Below, piece by piece: positions 2,269 to 25,148 of a DNA stretch of 64,000 nt. Location: positions 248,001 to 312,000 of the IMG/VR virus record IMGVR_UViG_3300047476_002078. One strand, given 5' to 3'. The position numbers and the translations under genes were made by a program. The stretch's first letter is position 1. Every line of letters starts with the position of its first letter. The notes under the pieces were generated by a model. It did no database searches and was not told the DNA's origin. It saw only the letters and a program-made list of their open reading frames with translations.

Positions 2269-2308
2269 TATTCCTCAAAAGTTTAACAACACTAAGGAGA
2301 GTGTTCTT

Positions 2309-2665
2309 ATGCTCAAGAAGGCAGATAGACTAAAAATTGAAAAACTTATGAAAGCTGAAATTGTTTCCCTTCAGGAACAATTGAATAGCATTGAAATTCA
2401 ACCCTCTTCAAACTCTGGAGATAGTGCAGACATGAGTGCTTCACTGTACGACGAGCACGCAGCTATTTTAATGAAAGAAAGGTTGTCTAAAAAAATTCAC
2501 GAGTACAAACAAGCATTAGCAAGAATCAATGACTCTGATTTTGGTATTTGTGAAGAAACTGGAGAACCTATCGAAGTAAAGAGACTTTTAATGGTTCCTA
2601 CCACTCGATTGTCAATTGAGGCTCAACAAAGATTAGAAAGCGAAAAAAGAAACTTTTACAGATGA
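2309..2665 (+). CDS. dksA: DksA/TraR family RNA polymerase-binding protein (single-Cys type)
   Basis: GDSADMSA coiled-coil tip (DxxD); ALARI...FGICEETGEPIEVKRL..VPTTRLSIEAQ; AAGGAG RBS favours ATG 2309. Confidence 0.85.
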   Translation: MLKKADRLKIEKLMKAEIVSLQEQLNSIEIQPSSNSGDSADMSASLYDEHAAILMKERLSKKIHEYKQALARINDSDFGICEETGEPIEVKRLLMVPTTRLSIEAQQRLESEKRNFYR

Positions 2666-17262: not shown

Positions 17263-18176
17263 ATTTGACAGAAAAAACAAAATTAAACATTTCTTTAAAT
17301 AAAATAACTCTTTTTTGTGTTGATGAAAAATACATAACAAATGAAGGGGAAGTGTTTTCATTTGATGAGTTTATAAGATCAGAAAAGGAATATTTCGTCT
17401 CACCTGAAGATTTCAGTATTATAATTTCAAAGTATTTAATATCCTTGTATCCTGACAAAAGTGTTGAAACTATTTTTGAGAAAATTTGTGATTATATCAA
17501 AATAAACGGTTCTATATTTAATAGAGACTTTCTTAGCATTGATTTTAAATTCAAATATTATAATCCTGAAAAAATAGAAAATTTTGAACCTTCTTTTGAA
17601 TTTTTGTATGGTGATTACTTGGCAGGAAATATAAACAGTAAATTTATAGAAAAATGTAGAAAGCTTTGTTATGACCATTTTTTATATATGACTATAGGTT
17701 CTTTCAACGCCATATTTACATCTTCTTTTGGATTAAGAGATTCCGTTCCTGACGCTTTAGAAAATTTATTTGATTTTGAAAATTCAAAATCTGTTTTGGA
17801 TTTATTAAAAAAACCATATTTTGACATTCTTTGGGATATTAAAGTGCCTATTGAATTCGATGGTAAAGATTCTGAAACAACCTCTGAATATTTGTTAAAA
17901 AATTTAGGTAAAGAAAAAATAAAAGAATTTTGGAATATATTACTATCCAAAAGAATCCCTGCTTATTTATACAGAAATTATGATAAAGACTTCACTAATA
18001 AAATGTTTAAAGAGAGATTGGATGCTATAGAAAGTCAAAATTTTGAACCTTTTATAAATAGCGAAACTGGTTTAATTTTTAGCGTTTTATATTCAAATGT
18101 TCCTTATTTCAGGAATTCTTATAACAGAGGTCTTATAACTTTCTTTAAGGAATCTGATTCAATTTGGCGGCTTTAG
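17259..18176 (+). CDS. Uncharacterised paralog family member B
   Basis: FVSPEDF..II..YLISLYP and PSFEFLYGDY. Confidence 0.75.
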   Translation: MNLTEKTKLNISLNKITLFCVDEKYITNEGEVFSFDEFIRSEKEYFVSPEDFSIIISKYLISLYPDKSVETIFEKICDYIKINGSIFNRDFLSIDFKFKYYNPEKIENFEPSFEFLYGDYLAGNINSKFIEKCRKLCYDHFLYMTIGSFNAIFTSSFGLRDSVPDALENLFDFENSKSVLDLLKKPYFDILWDIKVPIEFDGKDSETTSEYLLKNLGKEKIKEFWNILLSKRIPAYLYRNYDKDFTNKMFKERLDAIESQNFEPFINSETGLIFSVLYSNVPYFRNSYNRGLITFFKESDSIWRL

Positions 18177-18804
18177 TAGAAAACATTACGTGAGGCTTAT
18201 TCTTACTATGTAAGCTAGGGTCAACATACCCAAAGTGACACATTACTGTATATCTTTCTTTGTCACAAACCAATGGATTAACTTTGTGTTTAAATATGGG
18301 ATTAAGATTATTAACACAAACCAAAGTACCGTGTTGAGGCAGTATAGTATTAAGTGTAAATATTTTTTCAGAAGATTCTATTCCAACGCTCAAATATCCG
18401 CCGTCAGTTATAGTATATGTATCCTGTGTTAGATAAAGCATAGTTGTCATAAAAGAACCGTCAAGATAATCAGAGTGCCATGCCATACCTTCTCCATTTT
18501 TAAATTTATTGGACATTGGAAGACCTTGACTAAAATCTCCAAAATTTTTTATGAAAAAAGAAAAATACTCACTGGAGGATAAATAATTCCAGTAATAATG
18601 AAACAAAGAAGGTTGGGTATCTTTTTCCCAATGTAAAACCAAAGGGTCTTTCCAACCGTACTTTTCTTGATTAGCTTTTACAAAATTTTCTCCTCTAATT
18701 ATTTGTAGCAGGTCATCACAAAAATTTTTATCGACGGAAGAAATCACGTAACCATCTTTAAAAAATTGATTCAAATCAAAATGCGTATTATTAACTATTT
18801 CCAT
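18145..18804 (-). CDS. 2OG-Fe(II) oxygenase (prolyl-hydroxylase-like)
   Basis: WHSD...GGYL...HKV...RYT (HxD...H...R). Confidence 0.85.
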   Translation of the reverse strand: MEIVNNTHFDLNQFFKDGYVISSVDKNFCDDLLQIIRGENFVKANQEKYGWKDPLVLHWEKDTQPSLFHYYWNYLSSSEYFSFFIKNFGDFSQGLPMSNKFKNGEGMAWHSDYLDGSFMTTMLYLTQDTYTITDGGYLSVGIESSEKIFTLNTILPQHGTLVCVNNLNPIFKHKVNPLVCDKERYTVMCHFGYVDPSLHSKNKPHVMFSTKAAKLNQIP

Positions 18805-18806
18805 AA

Positions 18807-19337
18807 TCAGTATCCAGATTTACACATTAGAGAGTACCTTTTTAAAGGTAGCTTCATTTTTTCAACTTTATGAAAGAATAAAGGATTCCAATTCAATATC
18901 GAAACTAGAGTACCGTTTTCAGGCAGTATGTTTTGAATTTTATGGGCATTTTTTATAGAAAGACATCCGCCGAAAGACTCGTGCCAATTTTCATCACCTA
19001 AATAAAGTATATGATTAATGGGAAAATTGTGTGAAGCATCATTATGCCACTCTAAACCGTCACCTTGGCGATAACTATGAACGCAGAACTGCCTTTGCGA
19101 GAAATCACCGTAAATCTGAGTAAAAGGCTTCTCATATTCATTTAACATGTTTATAAAAAATTCTTGAATACTTTCTGGAACTTGAAGAGTTAAAAGCGGT
19201 GCATTGCTATCGTTATATTTTTCATTTGTATCTTGAAAGTTAAGTTTGCTAATCACTTCTAAAATTTCGCAAGGCGTTTGTATTTTTTGATAAGTAACAC
19301 CATTTTCAAATAATTCTGTGAGTTTAATTTTTAACAT
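18807..19337 (-). CDS. 2OG-Fe(II) oxygenase (prolyl-hydroxylase-like)
   Basis: WHND...LYL...GGCL...HKV...RYS. Confidence 0.85.
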   Translation of the reverse strand: MLKIKLTELFENGVTYQKIQTPCEILEVISKLNFQDTNEKYNDSNAPLLTLQVPESIQEFFINMLNEYEKPFTQIYGDFSQRQFCVHSYRQGDGLEWHNDASHNFPINHILYLGDENWHESFGGCLSIKNAHKIQNILPENGTLVSILNWNPLFFHKVEKMKLPLKRYSLMCKSGY

Positions 19338-19362: not shown

Positions 19363-19420
19363 TGACCGTAAAAAGCACCGTAATTTTTTTCTTGCTACCG
19401 TAAAGTTTTGTTACTATCAT
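19363..19420 (+). promoter_or_regulatory. sigma70 promoter of the ssb-ruvC-recA-sbc operon with three ACCGTAA boxes
   Basis: TTGCTA(19392)-17-TATCAT(19415); box variants at 19363, 19375 and 19395. Confidence 0.65.
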
Positions 19421-19509
19421 TTGATACAGATTGAAAATGCTGGAGAACAGCTAAAACGTGATTTCACGATTCTTACTCAAATGACCTAAAAGTGTCGAAG
19501 GAGAAAAAA

Positions 19510-20160
19510 ATGAGTATGTCTGAAGAAGTTGGATTTGATGATGAAAGTGTACGGTCTTTGGATTTTGAAAAGTACAAAGGTACAAAAGGAACAACAGATC
19601 GTTTAGCTTTTGTTCACCTTAAAGAAATTCAAGGCAAACTACAACCTGTACTGAGAAAAGCTTATGTTCATTACATTGAAAATGTAGGCTATGTTCTTGC
19701 GAACGATTATACACGCTCTCGTTTCGGTGAGCCTACGCTTCGTCTTGTAACGATTGTAGGTCAATACCAAACAGACAAATTCGGAAAAATTAAACAGCCT
19801 TTCAATGAAAGCAGTTTAACTCTGAAGTTTTTTGTTCTTAGTGCAAAAAAATATGATGCTCTTAGAAAAGCACATCAAGAATTCCCTCTTGATAAACATG
19901 ACTTAATGGTAACTTGTATTGAAGATCAGTACCAACAATTAAACTTCCAATCCTGCAAGGAAGCCGCTTGGGCAATTAAACCAGAAATTAAAAAAGCTGT
20001 TTTAGCACAAGTGGAAAAACTCGCACCATATCTTGAAGGTCAATTAGGTCAGAATTTAACAGCCGATCAAATTAAAGAGAAGCTAGGTGAATCTTCTGAA
20101 GGCGGTATTGTTGCTGACGATACGTCAAGCAATGCTGACGACATTATTGCCGGACTGTAA
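19510..20160 (+). CDS. Putative single-stranded DNA-binding protein
   Basis: First gene of the recombination operon; acidic-hydrophobic tail (DDTSSNADDIIAGL); AAGGAG RBS at 19498; codon usage like highly expressed genes. Confidence 0.5.
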   Translation: MSMSEEVGFDDESVRSLDFEKYKGTKGTTDRLAFVHLKEIQGKLQPVLRKAYVHYIENVGYVLANDYTRSRFGEPTLRLVTIVGQYQTDKFGKIKQPFNESSLTLKFFVLSAKKYDALRKAHQEFPLDKHDLMVTCIEDQYQQLNFQSCKEAAWAIKPEIKKAVLAQVEKLAPYLEGQLGQNLTADQIKEKLGESSEGGIVADDTSSNADDIIAGL

Positions 20161-20183
20161 TTTAGGAATCTAGTTTACAGTTT

Positions 20184-20291
20184 TACGGGGAAAACAAGGA
20201 AGTTGACTCGTAGTGCGAGAAAGGTGGAGGGTCTAGTGACAAGGAAGTGTATCACAAAGACCCTCCTTCTTTTTAGAACAAAGGAATGTTC
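20184..20291 (+). promoter_or_regulatory. Structured RNA with three AAGGAA-loop hairpins (CsrA/RsmA-type sites); the middle one is terminator-like
   Basis: aac-AAGGAA-gtt inside tacggg/ctcgta; ac-AAGGAA-gt inside ggagggtct/agaccctcc followed by ttcttttt; gaaca-AAGGAA-tgttc over the ruvC RBS. Confidence 0.65.
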
Positions 20292-20945
20292 ATGCGTGTT
20301 TTGGGCATTGACCCTTCACTTACAAATTTAGGATATGTTGTCTTAGAAGATGGTAAAGTTTTAGAAAAAGGAAGATTTCAGACTAATCCTGAAGATGGTT
20401 TAAATGTTCAAAGGTATTTAATCCAAGCAAACAGGGTTTCTGAAATAATTGAAAAGTACGAAATAAAATACGTTTCTTCTGAATCACCGATATTCCAAGA
20501 TTTCAATACAGAAGTTCTATACGGTCTTCAAAGTTTTTTACATTTAGTGTATTGGGTACACGCTGTAAATGTAGTCATATTATCTCCACTCCAAGTTAAA
20601 AGTTACGCTTTACCGAATTTCAAAGGAAAGATTTTTAAATCTGATATGGTAAAAGCTGCAAGAAAAGATATGGGTCTTCCTGATAACTCACGTCTTGCTA
20701 ATGATGTAGCTGACGCTTATTGGATTTCAAAAATTGGATTACGTTGGTGGATGTTTTATGAAAAACTTATTACAGAAAAAGATTTAACCGTAAAAGAGAA
20801 TCAAATGTTTTTGCACAGTCACACATTTACTCGTGGCAAAAAACAAGGTCAAACAGAAAAGAAGGGTATTGTCTTCCGTAAAAATGAAATTTACTATATT
20901 TATGAAGAATTAAAAAAACCGATATTTTTATTTAAGGGGAAATAA
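20292..20945 (+). CDS. ruvC: RuvC-like Holliday junction resolvase
   Basis: MRVLGIDPS, ESP, P..VK, K..M, NDVADA; alternative ATG at 20286. Confidence 0.85.
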   Translation: MRVLGIDPSLTNLGYVVLEDGKVLEKGRFQTNPEDGLNVQRYLIQANRVSEIIEKYEIKYVSSESPIFQDFNTEVLYGLQSFLHLVYWVHAVNVVILSPLQVKSYALPNFKGKIFKSDMVKAARKDMGLPDNSRLANDVADAYWISKIGLRWWMFYEKLITEKDLTVKENQMFLHSHTFTRGKKQGQTEKKGIVFRKNEIYYIYEELKKPIFLFKGK

Positions 20946-20948
20946 TTT

Positions 20949-22205
20949 ATGGCTGTTAAAAAAGGTAAAGAGACTCAGAAAAAGGTTTCTATGTCTGAGC
21001 TTGTAAAAAAACTCGCTGCTAAAAGCGATGATAAAGATTTGTTCTATAGCAAAGAAAGGCACAGAGAAATTGAATGTATTGATACAGGTTCAATTATTAT
21101 CAATAAAGTCATCGGTCTTGACGGTATTCCAAAAGGCAGGATAACTGAAATTTTCGGAATGGAGTCAAGTGGTAAATCAACACTTGTACAATCGTTAGCA
21201 ATTCAATGTTTAAAAAACGGAGGAAAAGTTCTCTATTTAGATTATGAGCAAGCCTTCGATACTGAATATGCTAGAAAGCAGGGATTAGATATTGATGACC
21301 CTGACACATTTATTTTAGCTCAACCTAAAACATTTGAAGAAGGCTTTGCAATCTGCCGTGAATTCTTGGATTGCGTGGAAGGTCTTGATCTAATTATTAT
21401 TGACTCTGTAGCTGCTATGACACCATCAAAGATTCTTAATGCTGAGATTGAAAAAGAGCTACAAATTGGTTTAATGGCTCGCCACATGGCTCAATTTTGT
21501 GCTGAGATGACAAAAACTATATCTAAGACAAATACAGCTATGGTTGTAGTAAACCAAGTTCGTAGTCGTATTAAAACAAATATGTACGATGCTGGACCTG
21601 ATACAGATACAACAGGCGGTAAAGCTCTCAAGTTTTACGCCTCTTTAAGACTGGAACTACGTCATAGAAAAATTGAAACTATAAGCACTACTAATGACAT
21701 TGATGGGACACCTGAAGACAAACCTGTTGGAATGTTATGTCAAGTAATTAACCGTAAAAACAAAGTTGCAAACCCATACCGTAAAGCTGAATTTGCGATT
21801 AGATTCGGAGAAGGTATTGATAACGTCAGAAGTGTAATAGATGTTTCTGAAAATCTAGGTCTGATTAAAAAAGCTGGGGCTTGGTTCAACTTCCGTAAAG
21901 ATATTCCATTTGATTTAGATGAGGACTTGATGACTCAAGAAGGGAAAATGCAAGGACTTGAAACAGTCAGAGAATATTTAGTTAAGCACACAAAAGTTTT
22001 GGCGACGTTAGTGGACAACATTTATGTTGAAAAAGATGATGAAGTCGAAAGAGAGTCTAAAAAAGATGATCTATCGACAACAGGAGTAGAATCTGGAAAC
22101 TTCGATGCTATCGAACTTAATGATGAAGAAGAAGCTGCTATAGCAGAAGCTCAATCTAAAGTTAAGAAAAGTAAAAAGAAAGCAAAAGAAGTTGAAATAG
22201 AGTGA
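20949..22205 (+). CDS. recA: RecA recombinase
   Basis: GIPKGRITEIFGMESSGKST, IIIDSVAAM, NQVR, TTGGKALKFYAS, KNKVA.PY. Confidence 0.95.
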   Translation: MAVKKGKETQKKVSMSELVKKLAAKSDDKDLFYSKERHREIECIDTGSIIINKVIGLDGIPKGRITEIFGMESSGKSTLVQSLAIQCLKNGGKVLYLDYEQAFDTEYARKQGLDIDDPDTFILAQPKTFEEGFAICREFLDCVEGLDLIIIDSVAAMTPSKILNAEIEKELQIGLMARHMAQFCAEMTKTISKTNTAMVVVNQVRSRIKTNMYDAGPDTDTTGGKALKFYASLRLELRHRKIETISTTNDIDGTPEDKPVGMLCQVINRKNKVANPYRKAEFAIRFGEGIDNVRSVIDVSENLGLIKKAGAWFNFRKDIPFDLDEDLMTQEGKMQGLETVREYLVKHTKVLATLVDNIYVEKDDEVERESKKDDLSTTGVESGNFDAIELNDEEEAAIAEAQSKVKKSKKKAKEVEIE

Positions 22206-22213
22206 GGTAGATT

Positions 22214-23377
22214 TTGAAGGACGTTCTTAAAGTATCGGTTAAAAATATACAAGCTATTGAAGAAGCATCTATTGAAGTGGAAGGGTTTACTGGAATTGTC
22301 GGACGTTCCAATTCTGGTAAATCTGCTTTAATTAGGGGTTTATTTGCAGCTTTAACAAATAAGTCTCCTAAAGGCATTTTTCGATATAACACTAAAGAAA
22401 GCCAAGTAAAACTAGATGATGAATCTCGAAATATACATATTGAATGGAGAAAAGGCGACAGCATTAACATGTACAATGTTAATGGAAAAGAGCATACAAA
22501 AGTAGGTAAGGAGCCTCCTCCAGAAATAGCAGATTGGGGATTTAAAACCATTAAAGTTAATGATGAAACTCTTGATGTTCAATTTGCAAGACAACATCAA
22601 TATCTTTTTCTACTAGATAAATCAGGTGGATTTGTAGCCGAGTTTATATCAAAAATAACTAAAGCTGATATATTAACAGGGGCTTTAAAAGATTGTGAGT
22701 CTGATTTACGTAAAGCTAATGAGTCAATCAAGCACAACGATAAGGAAGTAGAAAAATTAAATCAAGATTTATCAAAATTTGACTCTTTAGATTATTATCA
22801 TGAAAGAGTTAAAAATCTTATTGAAGCTAAGTCAAACTTATTGAAACAAAACGCAGAAATCAAACAAATAGAAGAATGGTGCAAGCAAAAAGAAGTCTTT
22901 GTTTCAGAGTATAAGAAGTTAGGAGAAACCCCAGAAATTATAGAATTTCAATTTGATCTATCAGAATTAAAAAAAATTAAAGATTGGTCAGATGAAGTAG
23001 AAGAACAAAAAAATAAACTAATCTCTGCAAGAAAAGTTGATGACTGTCAAATACCAGAAGTAAGTTTCGATATTGATATATTAAAAGTTTTTGAAGAATA
23101 CTTCCAATTATTAAAAAAATCAAATTCAGACATTCCTTCTATACCAAAAGCGGAATTCAATCTTGATGAAATAAAAGAAATACAAAATTTGATAGAAGAG
23201 AAAGATTCTTTAGATTTTGACAAAGATCAAATTGAAGAAGATTTAGAAAATGCTTGTTCTAAAATAATAGAACTAGAAAAACAAATGAAATCTTTAGAGA
23301 AACAATTAGGTAAGTGTCCACTGTGCAAGCACGATTTTAAAGGCATTTCGCACGACCATTTGGAGTTTAACGCATGA
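22214..23377 (+). CDS. SbcC/Rad50-like ATPase, N-terminal half (Walker A, Q-loop, coiled coil, Zn hook)
   Basis: KNIQA, GRSNSGKS, FARQ, ends in GKCPLC; no Walker B. Confidence 0.8.
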   Translation: MKDVLKVSVKNIQAIEEASIEVEGFTGIVGRSNSGKSALIRGLFAALTNKSPKGIFRYNTKESQVKLDDESRNIHIEWRKGDSINMYNVNGKEHTKVGKEPPPEIADWGFKTIKVNDETLDVQFARQHQYLFLLDKSGGFVAEFISKITKADILTGALKDCESDLRKANESIKHNDKEVEKLNQDLSKFDSLDYYHERVKNLIEAKSNLLKQNAEIKQIEEWCKQKEVFVSEYKKLGETPEIIEFQFDLSELKKIKDWSDEVEEQKNKLISARKVDDCQIPEVSFDIDILKVFEEYFQLLKKSNSDIPSIPKAEFNLDEIKEIQNLIEEKDSLDFDKDQIEEDLENACSKIIELEKQMKSLEKQLGKCPLCKHDFKGISHDHLEFNA

Positions 23378-24327
23378 AATTTAAAGCGATAACTATAGGA
23401 GATGTACACTTAGCAGATAAAACTCCAGCATCACGCTTAGATAACTATCGTGAAACTCTTTTTGAAGAATTGATGATGGCTAGACAAGTAGCCTTGGAAG
23501 AAAAAGCTGACGCTGTTCTAATAACAGGAGATATTTTTGATGTTAAATCACCTAAACTCAATTCTCATTACTTGGTATCAAAAGCTATATCGCTTTTTTC
23601 CTCATTTCCTTGTCCTGTTTACAGCATCATCGGAAACCATGATATTACTGCTAATAGGATTGATTCTCTTGATAAACAGCCGTTAGCTGTTCTTTTCAAT
23701 TCCGGTGCTGTGAAAAGATTAGATAGAGAAACAATTAATGGTGTAGATATTGTTGGAATTCATTTTAACGAAAACAATTCTTATGAAACTTTGTCCCAAA
23801 AGAAGCAAGACGGAAAACCTTTAATTGCTGTATGTCACGTTCTAGCGTCTCCCACAGGAGGAGACATGTTCGGTGAACCTATATTCTCTTATAAAACTTT
23901 AGCATCTAGCGATACAGAAGTAGATGTTTATGTTTTCGGGCATTATCATCACGATCAAGGAATTCAAAAAATTGGAAAAAAATCATTTATTAACATAGGT
24001 TCATTAGCTAGAGGTGCTTTAAGTAAAGAAAATATAGATAGACAAGTTAAAGTTGGAAAAGTTGTATGGGATGGTAAAAAATTTGAATGTTCTGAAATCC
24101 CATTACCTGTTAAGCCCGGAAGTGAAATTTTCAATATTGAAAAGAAACAAGAGCTTGAACACAGAGAAACAGAAATTGAAAAATTTGTATCCACATTAAA
24201 TAAAACTGACTTATTTGAAAACATCTCCACGCTAGAAGAAACTATAAAAGAAATGCGTCTTGATTCCGCTATCCGAATCCGTGTTACGGAATATTTGAAT
24301 AATAGAGGGGCTGGGATAAACGTATGA
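23374..24327 (+). CDS. sbcD: SbcD/Mre11-like metallophosphoesterase nuclease
   Basis: GDVHL, TGDIFD, GNHD, CH, FGHYH, NIGSL.R. Confidence 0.88.
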   Translation: MKFKAITIGDVHLADKTPASRLDNYRETLFEELMMARQVALEEKADAVLITGDIFDVKSPKLNSHYLVSKAISLFSSFPCPVYSIIGNHDITANRIDSLDKQPLAVLFNSGAVKRLDRETINGVDIVGIHFNENNSYETLSQKKQDGKPLIAVCHVLASPTGGDMFGEPIFSYKTLASSDTEVDVYVFGHYHHDQGIQKIGKKSFINIGSLARGALSKENIDRQVKVGKVVWDGKKFECSEIPLPVKPGSEIFNIEKKQELEHRETEIEKFVSTLNKTDLFENISTLEETIKEMRLDSAIRIRVTEYLNNRGAGINV

Positions 24328-25148
24328 CAGATATTAAAACTTTGGATTACAGTGGTTTAAAGGACTATGAAGATTGCCCTCAAAGATTTTTATGGTCACG
24401 TATTGAAAAGCGTAAACCTAAAATTCCTGAAAACGCTTACTATTGGATTTGTGGCACAGTTAAGCAAAAAATGTTCGAGCTTTTTGTTAATGAGCGTTGG
24501 TATCTGAAAGGGAAAGACTGTGTTCCTTTTATGGAAAGTATGGCTCCAAAACTTTTTGAAGATACTCTCAAATGGGCAAAAGTTGATTGGTCTGCCAGTT
24601 ATGCCAAATTAACCAAAGAGGATATGATACAAGAAGTTAAAAAAGGGGTCAAAGATGGCATTAAAATAATCAAAGACCATCGGTTAATTTCCGCAGCCTC
24701 TAAATCTGAAATAAAATTAACTGCGAATATTAATAATTGGTTTTCATTAGTTGGAAAAGTTGATTTCATAATCAAGCATAATGATACAAATGAGTCCATA
24801 ATAGTAGATGGCAAAGATACAGTAGATTCCGCTAAGATGCCTTCAGTAGACCCAAGACAGTTATGGATTTATAGCTTATTGCATCAAAGAAATTACGGAG
24901 ATTATCCAAATAAGCTAGGTTTTCTTTTTTGGAGACATGATACCGTTTTGTATTATGATGCTAAAGAAGGAATCGAAGCTGTCACTGAATGGGCAAAAAA
25001 GTCTTTCTGGGACATTAAGAAAGACAAATTTGAGCCAAAGCCTTCCCAATCTGCTTGCTTTTTTTGCAAGTATAAAAATGAATGTGACGCTTATAAAACT
25101 GAATCAGAGCTACTAAACATACCCGAAGGTGACGAAATAACTTTTTGA
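24324..25148 (+). CDS. PD-(D/E)XK exonuclease (AddB/Cas4-like, four-Cys Fe-S staple)
   Basis: YEDCP, GKVDFI, IVDGK, QL.IY, CFFCKYKNEC. Confidence 0.8.
   Translation: MTDIKTLDYSGLKDYEDCPQRFLWSRIEKRKPKIPENAYYWICGTVKQKMFELFVNERWYLKGKDCVPFMESMAPKLFEDTLKWAKVDWSASYAKLTKEDMIQEVKKGVKDGIKIIKDHRLISAASKSEIKLTANINNWFSLVGKVDFIIKHNDTNESIIVDGKDTVDSAKMPSVDPRQLWIYSLLHQRNYGDYPNKLGFLFWRHDTVLYYDAKEGIEAVTEWAKKSFWDIKKDKFEPKPSQSACFFCKYKNECDAYKTESELLNIPEGDEITF

What the first reader, a model, noticed from the sequence alone, without database searches (positions are those of the whole stretch)
20184..20291. Three AAGGAA-capped hairpins: host CsrA/RsmA-type control element in front of ruvC-recA-sbcCD
Seen: within ~110 nt, three stems present the same hexaloop AAGGAA (20196, 20241, 20281). 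The first two read ACAAGGAAGT, matching the ACANGGANGU consensus. The second caps a GC-rich terminator-like stem followed by U residues. The third (gaaca/tgttc) displays the ruvC Shine-Dalgarno in its loop. Established: CsrA/RsmA dimers bind ANGGAN hexaloops and repress translation when one overlaps the SD. Inference: phage recombination genes are tied to the host carbon/lifestyle regulator, and/or the abundant upstream transcript's 3' UTR acts as a CsrA sponge.
Basis: partly seen in the sequence, partly recalled or inferred. Interest (0 to 1): 0.75.

Follow-up and report, generated by a model that had tools for sequence, protein, structure and literature searches.

The report
Conserved GGA-loop hairpins after phage SSB gene
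The spacer between a gp32-like single-strand-binding gene and ruvC of an uncultured 356-kb freshwater phage holds a transcription terminator whose tip carries a GGA hexaloop kept across distant relatives. The loop matches the binding consensus of the bacterial regulator CsrA, but the binder and the host are unknown.

Summary
AAGGAA sits at 20196, 20241 and 20281. ACAAGGAAGT occurs twice. All three GGA are unpaired (p>=0.88) at hairpin tips.

The parts:
- Hairpin 2 (20218-20274, -24.9 kcal/mol, U-run) is the terminator/attenuator of a highly transcribed gp32-like SSB gene. Metatranscriptome depth falls from 4-15 to 0 across it.
- Site 3 is the ordinary ruvC Shine-Dalgarno in a weak stem that a 90% relative lacks.
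- Hairpin 1 occurs only in the window's own clade.

The new result is comparative. In a "core" subfamily of huge phages the SSB-ruvC hairpin keeps an A-N-G-G-A-N hexaloop, mostly closed by C-G. This holds in 9 of 17 lineages, across two deep clades, while the stem sequence has turned over completely. All 10 pairs covary, and G.U pairs mark a sense-strand RNA. Four more lineages have CC[AAGGAU]GG (GG replaced by UU in L017) right after the stop codon. One has three CC[ACGGAN]GG motifs between recA and sbcC. Control loop patterns, other terminators of this genome and the broader family show nothing similar.

The motif equals the CsrA/Rsm consensus (A/U)CANGGANG(U/A) and is not a good Shine-Dalgarno. 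The phage encodes no CsrA, and the host could not be identified. A selected protein-binding RNA loop is well supported. CsrA as the binder is plausible but unproven.

The parts
19392..19420 (+). Candidate sigma-70-type promoter of the SSB gene (TTGCTA-17-TATCAT).
   Evidence: Consensus scan. Metatranscriptome contigs begin at 19439-19465. This is inference, not mapped.
19510..20160 (+). gp32-like single-stranded-DNA-binding protein gene (216 aa from ATG 19510, SD AAGGAG 19499-19504, acidic C-terminal tail ...DDIIAGL).
   Evidence: AF2 model on alignment A2, pLDDT 77. Foldseek top PDB hits are T4 gp32 and RB69 gp32, prob 0.90-0.95, TM about 0.44. BFVD hits include phage SSBs. No Pfam or PHROG hit. 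Covered by RNA contigs in 4 of 4 metatranscriptomes.
20180..20216 (+). Hairpin 1: 7-bp lower stem, internal loop, AAC/GUU, hexaloop AAGGAA (20196-20201). It reads ACAAGGAAGU. dG -9.2 kcal/mol.
   Evidence: Present only in the window clade (L002-4, L099, L005). In L005 the loop is AAGGAU and G-C becomes G.U in the stem.
20218..20274 (+). Hairpin 2: intrinsic terminator/attenuator. The A-tract 20218-24 pairs with the U-tract. Main stem 20226-34 / 20258-66. Inner stem 20236-41 / 20248-54. Apical ACAAGGAAGU with loop 20241-46. U-run 20267-74. dG -24.9 kcal/mol.
   Evidence: RNA depth drops across it. It is the positional homologue of the conserved GGA-hexaloop hairpin in relatives.
20276..20291 (+). 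Hairpin 3: GAACA/UGUUC around AAGGAA (20281-86), which is the Shine-Dalgarno of ruvC. dG -2.5 kcal/mol.
   Evidence: GGA lies 6 nt before ATG 20292. The stem is not kept in L005. AAGGAA peaks at -11 before genes genome-wide.
20292..20945 (+). RuvC-like Holliday-junction resolvase gene.
   Evidence: PHROG 159 at 5.6e-24. Pfam RuvC match is below its cut-off. Homologues at 56-98% identity.
20949..25148 (+). recA (20949-22205), sbcC-like ATPase (22214-23377), sbcD-like phosphoesterase (23374-24327) and PD-(D/E)XK nuclease (24324-25148), tightly packed downstream of ruvC.
   Evidence: Pfam. The same gene order occurs in relatives.

Best explanation
The 131-nt spacer is the 3' end of a strongly expressed gp32-like SSB message joined to the ruvC ribosome-binding site.

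Hairpin 2 plus its U-run terminates most transcription. ruvC-recA-sbcCD, which has no recognisable promoter of its own, is therefore fed by read-through at a much lower level.

The tip of that hairpin carries a selected, sequence-specific recognition loop: A-N-G-G-A-N closed by C-G, usually on A-U. This loop is a binding site for a trans-acting RNA-binding protein. It matches the CsrA/RsmA/RsmE consensus (A/U)CANGGANG(U/A) position for position and is a poor Shine-Dalgarno. The most likely binder is therefore a CsrA-family dimer supplied by the unknown host.

In the window's clade the site has been duplicated (hairpin 1, 45 nt upstream). A third AAGGAA loop overlaps the ruvC SD 40 nt downstream. 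A dimer could therefore bridge terminator loop and SD and dampen ruvC translation on read-through RNA, as CsrA does at the ColE7 T1 loop and cel SD. The abundant SSB mRNA would also hold CsrA at its 3' end.

Shown: the structures, terminator behaviour, loop conservation with stem covariation, and the motif match.
Inferred: that a protein binds, that it is CsrA, and the direction of the effect.

The confidence of 0.4 is for the whole statement including CsrA as the binder. The terminator role and the selected loop motif alone I put at about 0.8.
For: - Structure: all three GGA are unpaired at hairpin tips.
- Terminator: it has a GC stem and a U-run. In four lake metatranscriptomes depth is 4.4-14.6 at 20152-20222, 0.24-0.35 at 20223-20293 in three runs (10.3 in X8), and 0 in all four at 20294-20648. 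Contigs end at 20224-20226 in three runs and at about 20282 in X8. No promoter-like site lies in the spacer.
- Conservation: the strongest spacer hairpin has GGA in its apical loop in 11 of 19 core-subfamily spacers against 0 of 27 in the broader family.
- Loop sequences: AAGGAA, AAGGAU, AUGGAU, AUGGAA, AGGGAU and ACGGAC. A, G, G, A are invariant. The closing pair is C-G in 9 of 11 rows.
- Covariation: all 10 stem pairs show changes on both sides. 84.5% of cells pair, against 53-58% in slid controls, and 0 of 500 shuffles reach this. Frequent G.U pairs point to sense-strand RNA.
- Phylogeny: the trait lies on both sides of a branch of 1.49 substitutions per site in the SSB tree.
- Specificity: in 78 kb of core loci there are 10 ANGGAN hexaloops on stems >=8 bp, all on the sense strand. 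Seven control loop patterns gave 0, 0, 0, 1, 0, 0, 0. Only 1 of 42 other terminator-like hairpins in this genome has GGA in its loop.
- Multiplicity elsewhere: CC[AAGGAU]GG lies directly after the SSB stop in L007, L021 and L182 (CCAAGGAUUAGG in L017). Three CC[ACGGAN]GG motifs lie in the recA-sbcC spacer of L180, two of them predicted as hexaloops.
- Motif match: the Rsm motif CANGGANG and consensus (A/U)CANGGANG(U/A) are given in PMC6849547. The SELEX consensus RUACARGGAUGU with GGA in a loop, and CsrA binding to the ColE7 T1 loop plus the cel SD, are given in PMC2896534.
- Spacing: 45 and 40 nt between sites lies within the range a CsrA dimer is reported to bridge (my own knowledge, Mercante et al. 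2009).
Against: - No CsrA homologue is found in this complete phage genome or in five related records.
- The host is unidentified. Only about 30% of bacterial genomes carry csrA (PMC13443453).
- CANGGANG is not enriched genome-wide (53 against 45+-6.5), so no phage-wide Csr regulon is visible.
- Four core lineages lack the motif in the SSB-ruvC spacer (L014, L016, L121, L180).
- In L013, L019, L022 and L180 ruvC has no SD, so loop-to-SD bridging cannot be the conserved mechanism.
- L140, L163 and L179 have no U-run after the hairpin, so termination is not universal.
- The RNA evidence comes from assembled contigs, not reads. The 3' end is not mapped, and three runs stop just before hairpin 2.
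- No binding was tested.
Confidence: 0.4

Rival explanations
1. The loop is the operator of a phage-encoded RNA-binding protein that is not of the CsrA family. Candidates are the gp32-like SSB itself, another replication or recombination protein, or an unannotated small protein. Such a protein would set expression or processing within the SSB-ruvC-recA-sbcCD module, as T4 gp32, gp43 and RegA regulate their messages.
For: The motif is confined to spacers of this one gene module: after SSB in most lineages, after recA in L180, and at the sbcD SD in L014. It is also confined to one phage subfamily, whatever the GC content (31-50%) and so probably the host. It is not enriched elsewhere in the genome. 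Phage replication proteins that bind hairpins in their own mRNAs are established (T4 gp32, gp43; my own knowledge).
Against: No RegA, RegB, Hfq, FliW or CsrA homologue is present, and no candidate was identified. An exact match to an 8-position consensus of a known host protein would be a coincidence. gp32 autoregulation in T4 uses a 5' pseudoknot, not a 3' loop.
Confidence: 0.25
2. Nothing binds the loops. The spacer is just a terminator plus an SD, and the GGA loops persist by descent or because they favour hairpin folding or termination.
For: Hairpin 2 behaves as a terminator. AAGGAA is a common SD in this phage. Hairpin 3 is weak and not conserved. Hairpin 1 is limited to near-identical relatives. 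The 5' arms of all these hairpins are purine- and GGA-rich anyway.
Against: The loop stays invariant at A, G, G, A while every stem position changes. It is found in two deep clades. It is absent from 41 of 42 other terminator-like hairpins in the same genome and from 27 of 27 hairpins of the broader family. Extra copies appear outside terminators (L007-type flank motif; L180 triple).
Confidence: 0.15
3. The loops are Shine-Dalgarno mimics. They hold 30S subunits or terminating ribosomes through the anti-SD, as a stand-by or re-initiation tether, to feed translation of the next gene about 31-45 nt downstream.
For: GGA pairs with CCU of the 16S 3' end. The loop-to-ATG distance is fairly constant at 31-45 nt in nine lineages. 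This phage often shows SDs in hexaloops in front of genes: 17 hairpins with stems >=6 bp against 7.7+-2.6 expected.
Against: The variable positions do not extend SD pairing. N1 is A, U, G or C. N2 is A, U or C and never G, so GGAG is avoided. AUGGAU and ACGGAC are poor SDs. Conservation of the first loop A and of the C-G closing pair has no role in anti-SD pairing.
Confidence: 0.1
4. It is a DNA-level element: an operator, part of the ruvC promoter, or a replication or recombination signal formed by the inverted repeat.
For: It lies at the head of the recombination module. TATAAT-like boxes follow the hairpin in several relatives.
Against: The arms vary while the asymmetric centre is conserved, the opposite of a palindromic operator. 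G.U pairs work only in sense-strand RNA. The loop does not fall on a -35 position and no promoter-like site is found in the window's spacer. All 10 long-stem copies are on the coding strand.
Confidence: 0.05

Closest known systems
ColE7 cea-cei-cel operon: CsrA bound to the loop of terminator T1 and to the cel Shine-Dalgarno (PMC2896534)
   Same: A GGA-containing loop on an intercistronic terminator hairpin lies after a highly expressed gene. A second GGA site sits on the SD of the next gene a few tens of nucleotides downstream. It is on a mobile genetic element and the downstream genes depend on read-through.
   Different: Here there are three sites, not two. The element is in a lytic-type huge phage of unknown host. 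Binding is untested. In several relatives the downstream SD site does not exist.
CsrA/RsmE high-affinity sites: SELEX RUACARGGAUGU and hcnA-type (A/U)CANGGANG(U/A) hexaloops (PMC2896534, PMC6849547)
   Same: ACAAGGAAGU (twice), ACAGGGAUGU, ACAUGGAUGU and ACAUGGAAGU fit the consensus at every specified position. GGA is unpaired at the tip of a stem and the C-G pair closes the hexaloop.
   Different: The stems are long and GC-rich (8-15 bp) and act as terminators, rather than short leader hairpins. No CsrA gene is known for this system.
CsrB/RsmY/RsmZ sponge RNAs
   Same: An abundant RNA carries repeated GGA loops and could titrate CsrA.
   Different: There are only 1-3 motifs, on the 3' end of an mRNA rather than a dedicated sRNA with its own promoter. 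No Rfam family matches.
T4 gene 32 message and its translational autoregulation
   Same: The gene encodes a gp32-like SSB, is highly expressed and ends in a strong hairpin.
   Different: The T4 operator is a 5' pseudoknot plus an unstructured leader bound by gp32 itself. Here the conserved element is a 3' hairpin loop with a GGA motif.
Lambdoid boxB (nut) hairpins bound by N
   Same: A short purine-rich loop on an intergenic phage hairpin is recognised by sequence and shape, near terminators.
   Different: boxB has a 5-bp stem and a GNRA-like pentaloop upstream of terminators, with a boxA partner. Here a GGA hexaloop sits on the terminator itself and no boxA is seen.

Membership tests
CsrA/Rsm binding site | GGA unpaired in the loop of a hairpin | tested here: met
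   Unpaired probability >=0.88 for every GGA base at the three sites; MFE loops.
CsrA/Rsm binding site | Match to (A/U)CANGGANG(U/A) / CANGGANG | tested here: met
   ACAAGGAAGT at 20194 and 20239. Homologous loops in L013, L019, L022 and L132 match fully. L140, L163 and L143 match 8 of 10 positions and L179 6 of 10. Consensus taken from PMC6849547.
CsrA/Rsm binding site | Two or more sites within bridging distance of a dimer, one overlapping the SD of the regulated gene | tested here: inconclusive
   The window has spacings of 45 and 40 nt, and site 3 is the ruvC SD. Most relatives have one site, and four lineages have no SD before ruvC.
CsrA/Rsm binding site | A CsrA-family protein present in the cell (phage- or host-encoded) | tested here: inconclusive
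   Phage: none at E<=1, and none over the cut-off in 5 related records. Host: unknown; attempts gave nothing.
CsrA/Rsm binding site | Demonstrated binding and GGA-dependent regulation | not testable with these tools
   Needs EMSA and reporter assays.
Intrinsic (Rho-independent) terminator | GC-rich stem-loop followed by a U-tract just after a stop codon | tested here: met
   Stem 20226-34/20258-66 and TTCTTTTT, dG -24.9. The simple scan missed it because the loop is over 8 nt.
Intrinsic (Rho-independent) terminator | Drop of transcript level across it | tested here: met
   Depth 4.4-14.6 before it and 0 at 20294-20648 in 4 metatranscriptomes. These are contig-level data and the 3' end is not mapped.
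Intrinsic (Rho-independent) terminator | Structure conserved in relatives | tested here: met
   Every spacer >=50 nt has a strong hairpin. Covariation is shown. The U-run is missing in L140, L163 and L179.
CsrB/Rsm sponge sRNA families (Rfam) | Match to a curated covariance model; many GGA repeats; own promoter | tested here: not met
   No Rfam hit better than E = 0.97 and none to a Csr/Rsm family. Only three motifs, and no promoter in the spacer.
T4 gp32-type SSB (upstream gene) | gp32 core fold with acidic C-terminal tail | tested here: met
   Foldseek hits 8gme, 2a1k and 1gpc, prob 0.66-0.95, TM 0.41-0.44. Tail ...ADDIIAGL. Sequence families do not detect it, so it is a distant member.
Lambda-type boxA/boxB nut site | 5-bp stem with GNRA-like pentaloop and a boxA element | tested here: not met
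   The loops are 6 nt with GGA on 8-15-bp stems. No boxA-like CGCTCTT is seen in 20161-20291 (read by eye).

The most novel reading that the evidence does not exclude
The abundant SSB message of a whole clade of huge phages carries a conserved high-affinity CsrA decoy at its 3' end. Through it the phage titrates or recruits the host's global post-transcriptional regulator during infection. This would be a phage-borne, mRNA-embedded counterpart of CsrB/RsmZ, with extra copies added in some lineages (three in the window, three in L180).
Probability: 0.13. Interest if true: 0.85.

Novelty: new variant of a known kind. Interest (0 to 1): 0.62.

Why it matters
If the binder is CsrA, this would be, as far as two literature searches showed, the first conserved Csr-type RNA element described in phage genomes. 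It would tie a huge phage's recombination and replication module, or its most abundant early message, to the host's global carbon and lifestyle regulator. It would also give a sequence signature usable for host prediction, restricting hosts to csrA-bearing bacteria.

If the binder is a phage protein, the element is a new cis-regulatory RNA with independently evolved GGA-hexaloop recognition.

Either way the element is small, sharply defined and directly testable by EMSA and loop mutations. The comparative data show it is under selection in uncultured phages from lakes, wastewater and subsurface samples.

Tried and rejected
- Close DNA relatives in the phage collection: none.
- Single-protein scans of viral contigs: none. 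Relatives had to be reached through protein searches and contig look-ups.
- Rfam: only noise.
- Phage-encoded CsrA, FliW, RegA, RegB, Hfq: none.
- Host identification failed. The GTDB contig scan gave one irrelevant MAG. RecA's best cellular hits are about 44% identical and reflect database abundance. Terminase and gp23 models did not ring. A literature search gave nothing specific. Strong SD usage argues only against Bacteroidota-type hosts.
- Genome-wide Csr regulon: rejected. CANGGANG is at chance level. ANGGAN hexaloops on stems >=6 bp are modestly enriched (17 against 7.7), mostly as AU-rich SD-in-loop hairpins.
- Other AAGGAA clusters in the genome: collagen-like Gly-X-Y coding repeats.
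- The third CAAGGAAG at 19957 encodes the conserved peptide CKEAAW.
- Small ORF 20203-20331: no plausible RBS.
- Promoter readings of TTGACT (20203) and GTGACA (20236): no -10 box at the right spacing.
- Antiterminator pairing of the site-1 region with the terminator 3' arm (11 of 13 pairs by hand): weaker than the terminator and not conserved, so not pursued.
- Complex prediction was not used, because it gives no verdict for RNA.

Full report
**What the window is.** The window is bases 248,001-312,000 of a 355,874-bp virus record with direct terminal repeats and 33.9% G+C, from a freshwater metagenome. It has no close relative among deposited phages. The genes around the finding form a replication/recombination block:
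- ribonucleotide reductase small subunit, NAD-dependent ligase, RecD-like helicase and Lon protease;
- three genes of unknown function;
- two 2OG-Fe(II) oxygenases on the minus strand;
- a 216-aa gene (19510-20160);
- ruvC (20292-20945), recA, sbcC-like, sbcD-like and a PD-(D/E)XK nuclease.

**The upstream gene.** The 216-aa protein has no Pfam or PHROG match. An AlphaFold model built on 13 homologues (pLDDT 77) finds T4 gp32 and RB69 gp32 as its best solved-structure matches (prob 0.90-0.95, TM about 0.44). It also finds phage SSBs among predicted viral structures. The protein ends in an acidic tail. I read it as a gp32-like single-stranded-DNA-binding protein.

**Observation.**
- AAGGAA lies at 20196, 20241 and 20281.
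- ACAAGGAAGT lies at 20194 and 20239.
- A GC-rich stem, 20226-34 with 20258-66, is followed by TTCTTTTT.
- GAACA/TGTTC flanks the third AAGGAA.
- RNAfold places all three in six-base apical loops. Every GGA base is unpaired with probability >=0.88.
- The three hairpins are very unequal: -9.2, -24.9 and -2.5 kcal/mol.

AAGGAA alone is not remarkable. It is under-represented in the window. It is one of the phage's normal Shine-Dalgarno forms, peaking at -11 before genes. A triple within 91 nt would arise by chance in about a quarter of random placements. The exact 10-mer occurs three times in the genome, two of them here. Flush stems around AAGGAA are rare.

**Transcription.** Four lake metatranscriptomes hold contigs 95-100% identical to the SSB gene.
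- Summed word depth is 4.4-14.6 at 20152-20222.
- Depth is 0.24-0.35 at 20223-20293 in three runs and 10.3 in the fourth.
- Depth is zero in all four at 20294-20648, and at most 2.8 further into ruvC and recA.
- Contigs end at 20224-20226 in three runs and at about 20282 in the fourth.
- A uniform DNA contaminant would not give this profile.

No promoter-like site lies in the spacer. Hairpin 2 therefore behaves as the terminator/attenuator of an abundant SSB message, and ruvC-recA-sbcCD is fed by read-through. The exact 3' end is not mapped. The three contig ends just before hairpin 2 may reflect poor cDNA coverage of a structured 3' end, or processing after hairpin 1.

**Relatives.** RuvC homologues at 56-98% identity, and a wider set at 32-40%, were found in lake, marine, sediment and wastewater assemblies. 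DNA was fetched for 180 loci. The SSB-then-ruvC order holds in 127 loci. A "core" subfamily, defined by an SSB profile score >=255 bits, comprises 17 lineages.

Near relatives (98% identical RuvC) keep all three hairpins. A 90% relative (L005) keeps hairpins 1 and 2, with loop 1 changed to AAGGAU, but has lost the stem of hairpin 3. More distant lineages have a shorter spacer (50-91 nt) with one strong hairpin of entirely different sequence.

**The key result.** An unbiased census took the apical loop of the most stable hairpin in each spacer. It found GGA in 11 of 19 core spacers and in 0 of 27 spacers of the broader family.

Anchored on the loop, the hairpins of L013, L019, L022, L132, L140, L163, L179 and L143 have 8-15 contiguous pairs around A-N-G-G-A-N. 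The loops are AGGGAU, AUGGAU, AUGGAA, AAGGAA, ACGGAC and AAGGAU. The loop is closed by C-G in six of these eight, and by C-G in all three window-clade rows.

In the 11-row alignment A3:
- A, G, G, A of the loop are invariant.
- All ten stem pairs show changes on both sides.
- 84.5% of cells pair, against 53-58% when the partner is slid by 1-3 columns.
- No shuffle of 500 reaches the observed values.
- G.U pairs are frequent, so the structure belongs to the sense-strand RNA.

On an SSB tree the trait occurs in the window clade, in L013, in L019+L022, and in five of six members of a clade separated by a branch of 1.49 substitutions per site. It is therefore old and maintained, or repeatedly regained.

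Controls:
- In the 78 kb of core loci, ANGGAN hexaloops on stems >=8 bp number 10, all on the coding strand. Seven other loop patterns of equal information give 0, 0, 0, 1, 0, 0, 0.
- The 364 kb of broader-family loci give chance-level counts.
- In the window's own genome only 1 of 42 other terminator-like hairpins has GGA in its loop.

**Further copies.**
- A clade without the loop on its terminator (L007, L017, L021, L182) has a CCAAGGAU motif directly after the SSB stop codon: CC[AAGGAU]GG in L007, L021 and L182, and CCAAGGAUUAGG in L017.
- L180 lacks the motif after SSB. It has three CC[ACGGAN]GG motifs in the 97-nt recA-sbcC spacer, two predicted as hexaloops and one on a 10-bp stem.
- L014 shows the sbcD SD in TTTAACC[AAGGAA]GGTTGAA.

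The motif is thus a unit that recurs, sometimes in clusters, in spacers of this one gene module. The distance from loop to the ruvC ATG is 31-45 nt in nine lineages.

**What the motif resembles.** The conserved letters are C-A-N-G-G-A-N-G, usually with A and U outside. This is exactly the Rsm/CsrA motif CANGGANG and consensus (A/U)CANGGANG(U/A) (PMC6849547). It is close to the SELEX consensus RUACARGGAUGU with GGA in a loop (PMC2896534).

It is not shaped like a Shine-Dalgarno. The positions flanking GGA vary freely, and the 3' one is never G, so GGAG is avoided.

The nearest described system is the ColE7 operon. There CsrA binds the loop of terminator T1 after cei and the SD of cel, and represses cel translation.

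**What argues against CsrA.**
- The phage has no CsrA, FliW, RegA, RegB or Hfq gene, and five related records have no CsrA.
- The host could not be identified.
- Strong SD use argues only against Bacteroidota-like hosts.
- csrA is present in only about 30% of bacterial genomes (PMC13443453).
- CANGGANG is not enriched genome-wide.
- In L013, L019, L022 and L180 a TATAAT lies exactly 5 nt before the ruvC ATG and there is no SD. Repression of ruvC translation by loop-to-SD bridging therefore cannot be the conserved role. The conserved partner of the loop is the 3' end of the SSB message.

**Verdict.**
- Hairpin 2 is a terminator/attenuator. This is well supported.
- Site 3 is the ruvC SD in a weak, non-conserved stem.
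- Hairpin 1 is a clade-specific extra copy.
- The apical GGA hexaloop is a selected, sequence-specific RNA motif. I put this at about 0.8.
- That its binder is a host CsrA-family protein is the best single hypothesis, at about 0.4. It remains unproven.
- A phage-encoded binder is the main rival, at about 0.25.
The 3'-UTR binding-platform reading fits the comparative data better than control of ruvC.

Noticed in passing
L013:2484-2503, L019:2106-2125, L022:2484-2503, L180:1484-1503: In four related lineages a perfect TATAAT lies exactly 5 nt before the ruvC ATG and there is no Shine-Dalgarno. This suggests a leaderless ruvC mRNA starting at or next to the A of the start codon. L140, L163 and L179 instead have TATA(T)AA(G/C) right after the hairpin and no U-run.
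   Followed up: partly
window 2288-2311 (genome 250288-250311); also genome 47069, 75920, 118665, 158324, 160733 and 42819 (-): Several genes of this phage have their Shine-Dalgarno displayed in an A-N-GGA-N hexaloop on a 5-9-bp AU-rich stem directly before the start codon, e.g. AACACT[AAGGAG]AGTGTTcttATG. Genome-wide there are 17 such hairpins with stems >=6 bp against 7.7+-2.6 in shuffles.
   Followed up: partly
L180:3495-3545: Three tandem CC[ACGGAA/C]GG motifs lie in the recA-sbcC spacer of a relative that lacks the motif after its SSB gene.
   Followed up: yes
window 22283-22324: A 16-pair inverted repeat (with G.U pairs, loop TCGGACGTTC) lies inside the sbcC-like gene, over the codons of its Walker A motif (GRSNSGKS). 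It is probably incidental.
   Followed up: no
genome (outside the window) 150-520, 348560-349180, 353300-353480: Long collagen-like Gly-X-Y coding repeats (GVQGTTGVQGET...) lie near both ends of the genome, probably in a fibre protein. They account for all other AAGGAA clusters.
   Followed up: partly
window 18145-19337 (- strand): Two 2OG-Fe(II) oxygenase genes on the opposite strand sit between the conserved 305-aa gene and the SSB gene. Relatives at 56-67% identity have Lon, a 281-298-aa gene and SSB directly adjacent, so this pair is an insertion in the window's clade.
   Followed up: no
L001:2252-2968 (LR745208.1): In a distant 485-kb uncultured phage a 238-aa ORF is inserted between the SSB-like gene and ruvC. 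I read it by eye as HNH-endonuclease-like and did not check it.
   Followed up: no
window 19957-19964: A third CAAGGAAG 240 nt upstream of the spacer is coding. It spells the conserved CKEAAW motif of the SSB family (Cys and His/Asp conserved, perhaps a gp32-like zinc site).
   Followed up: partly
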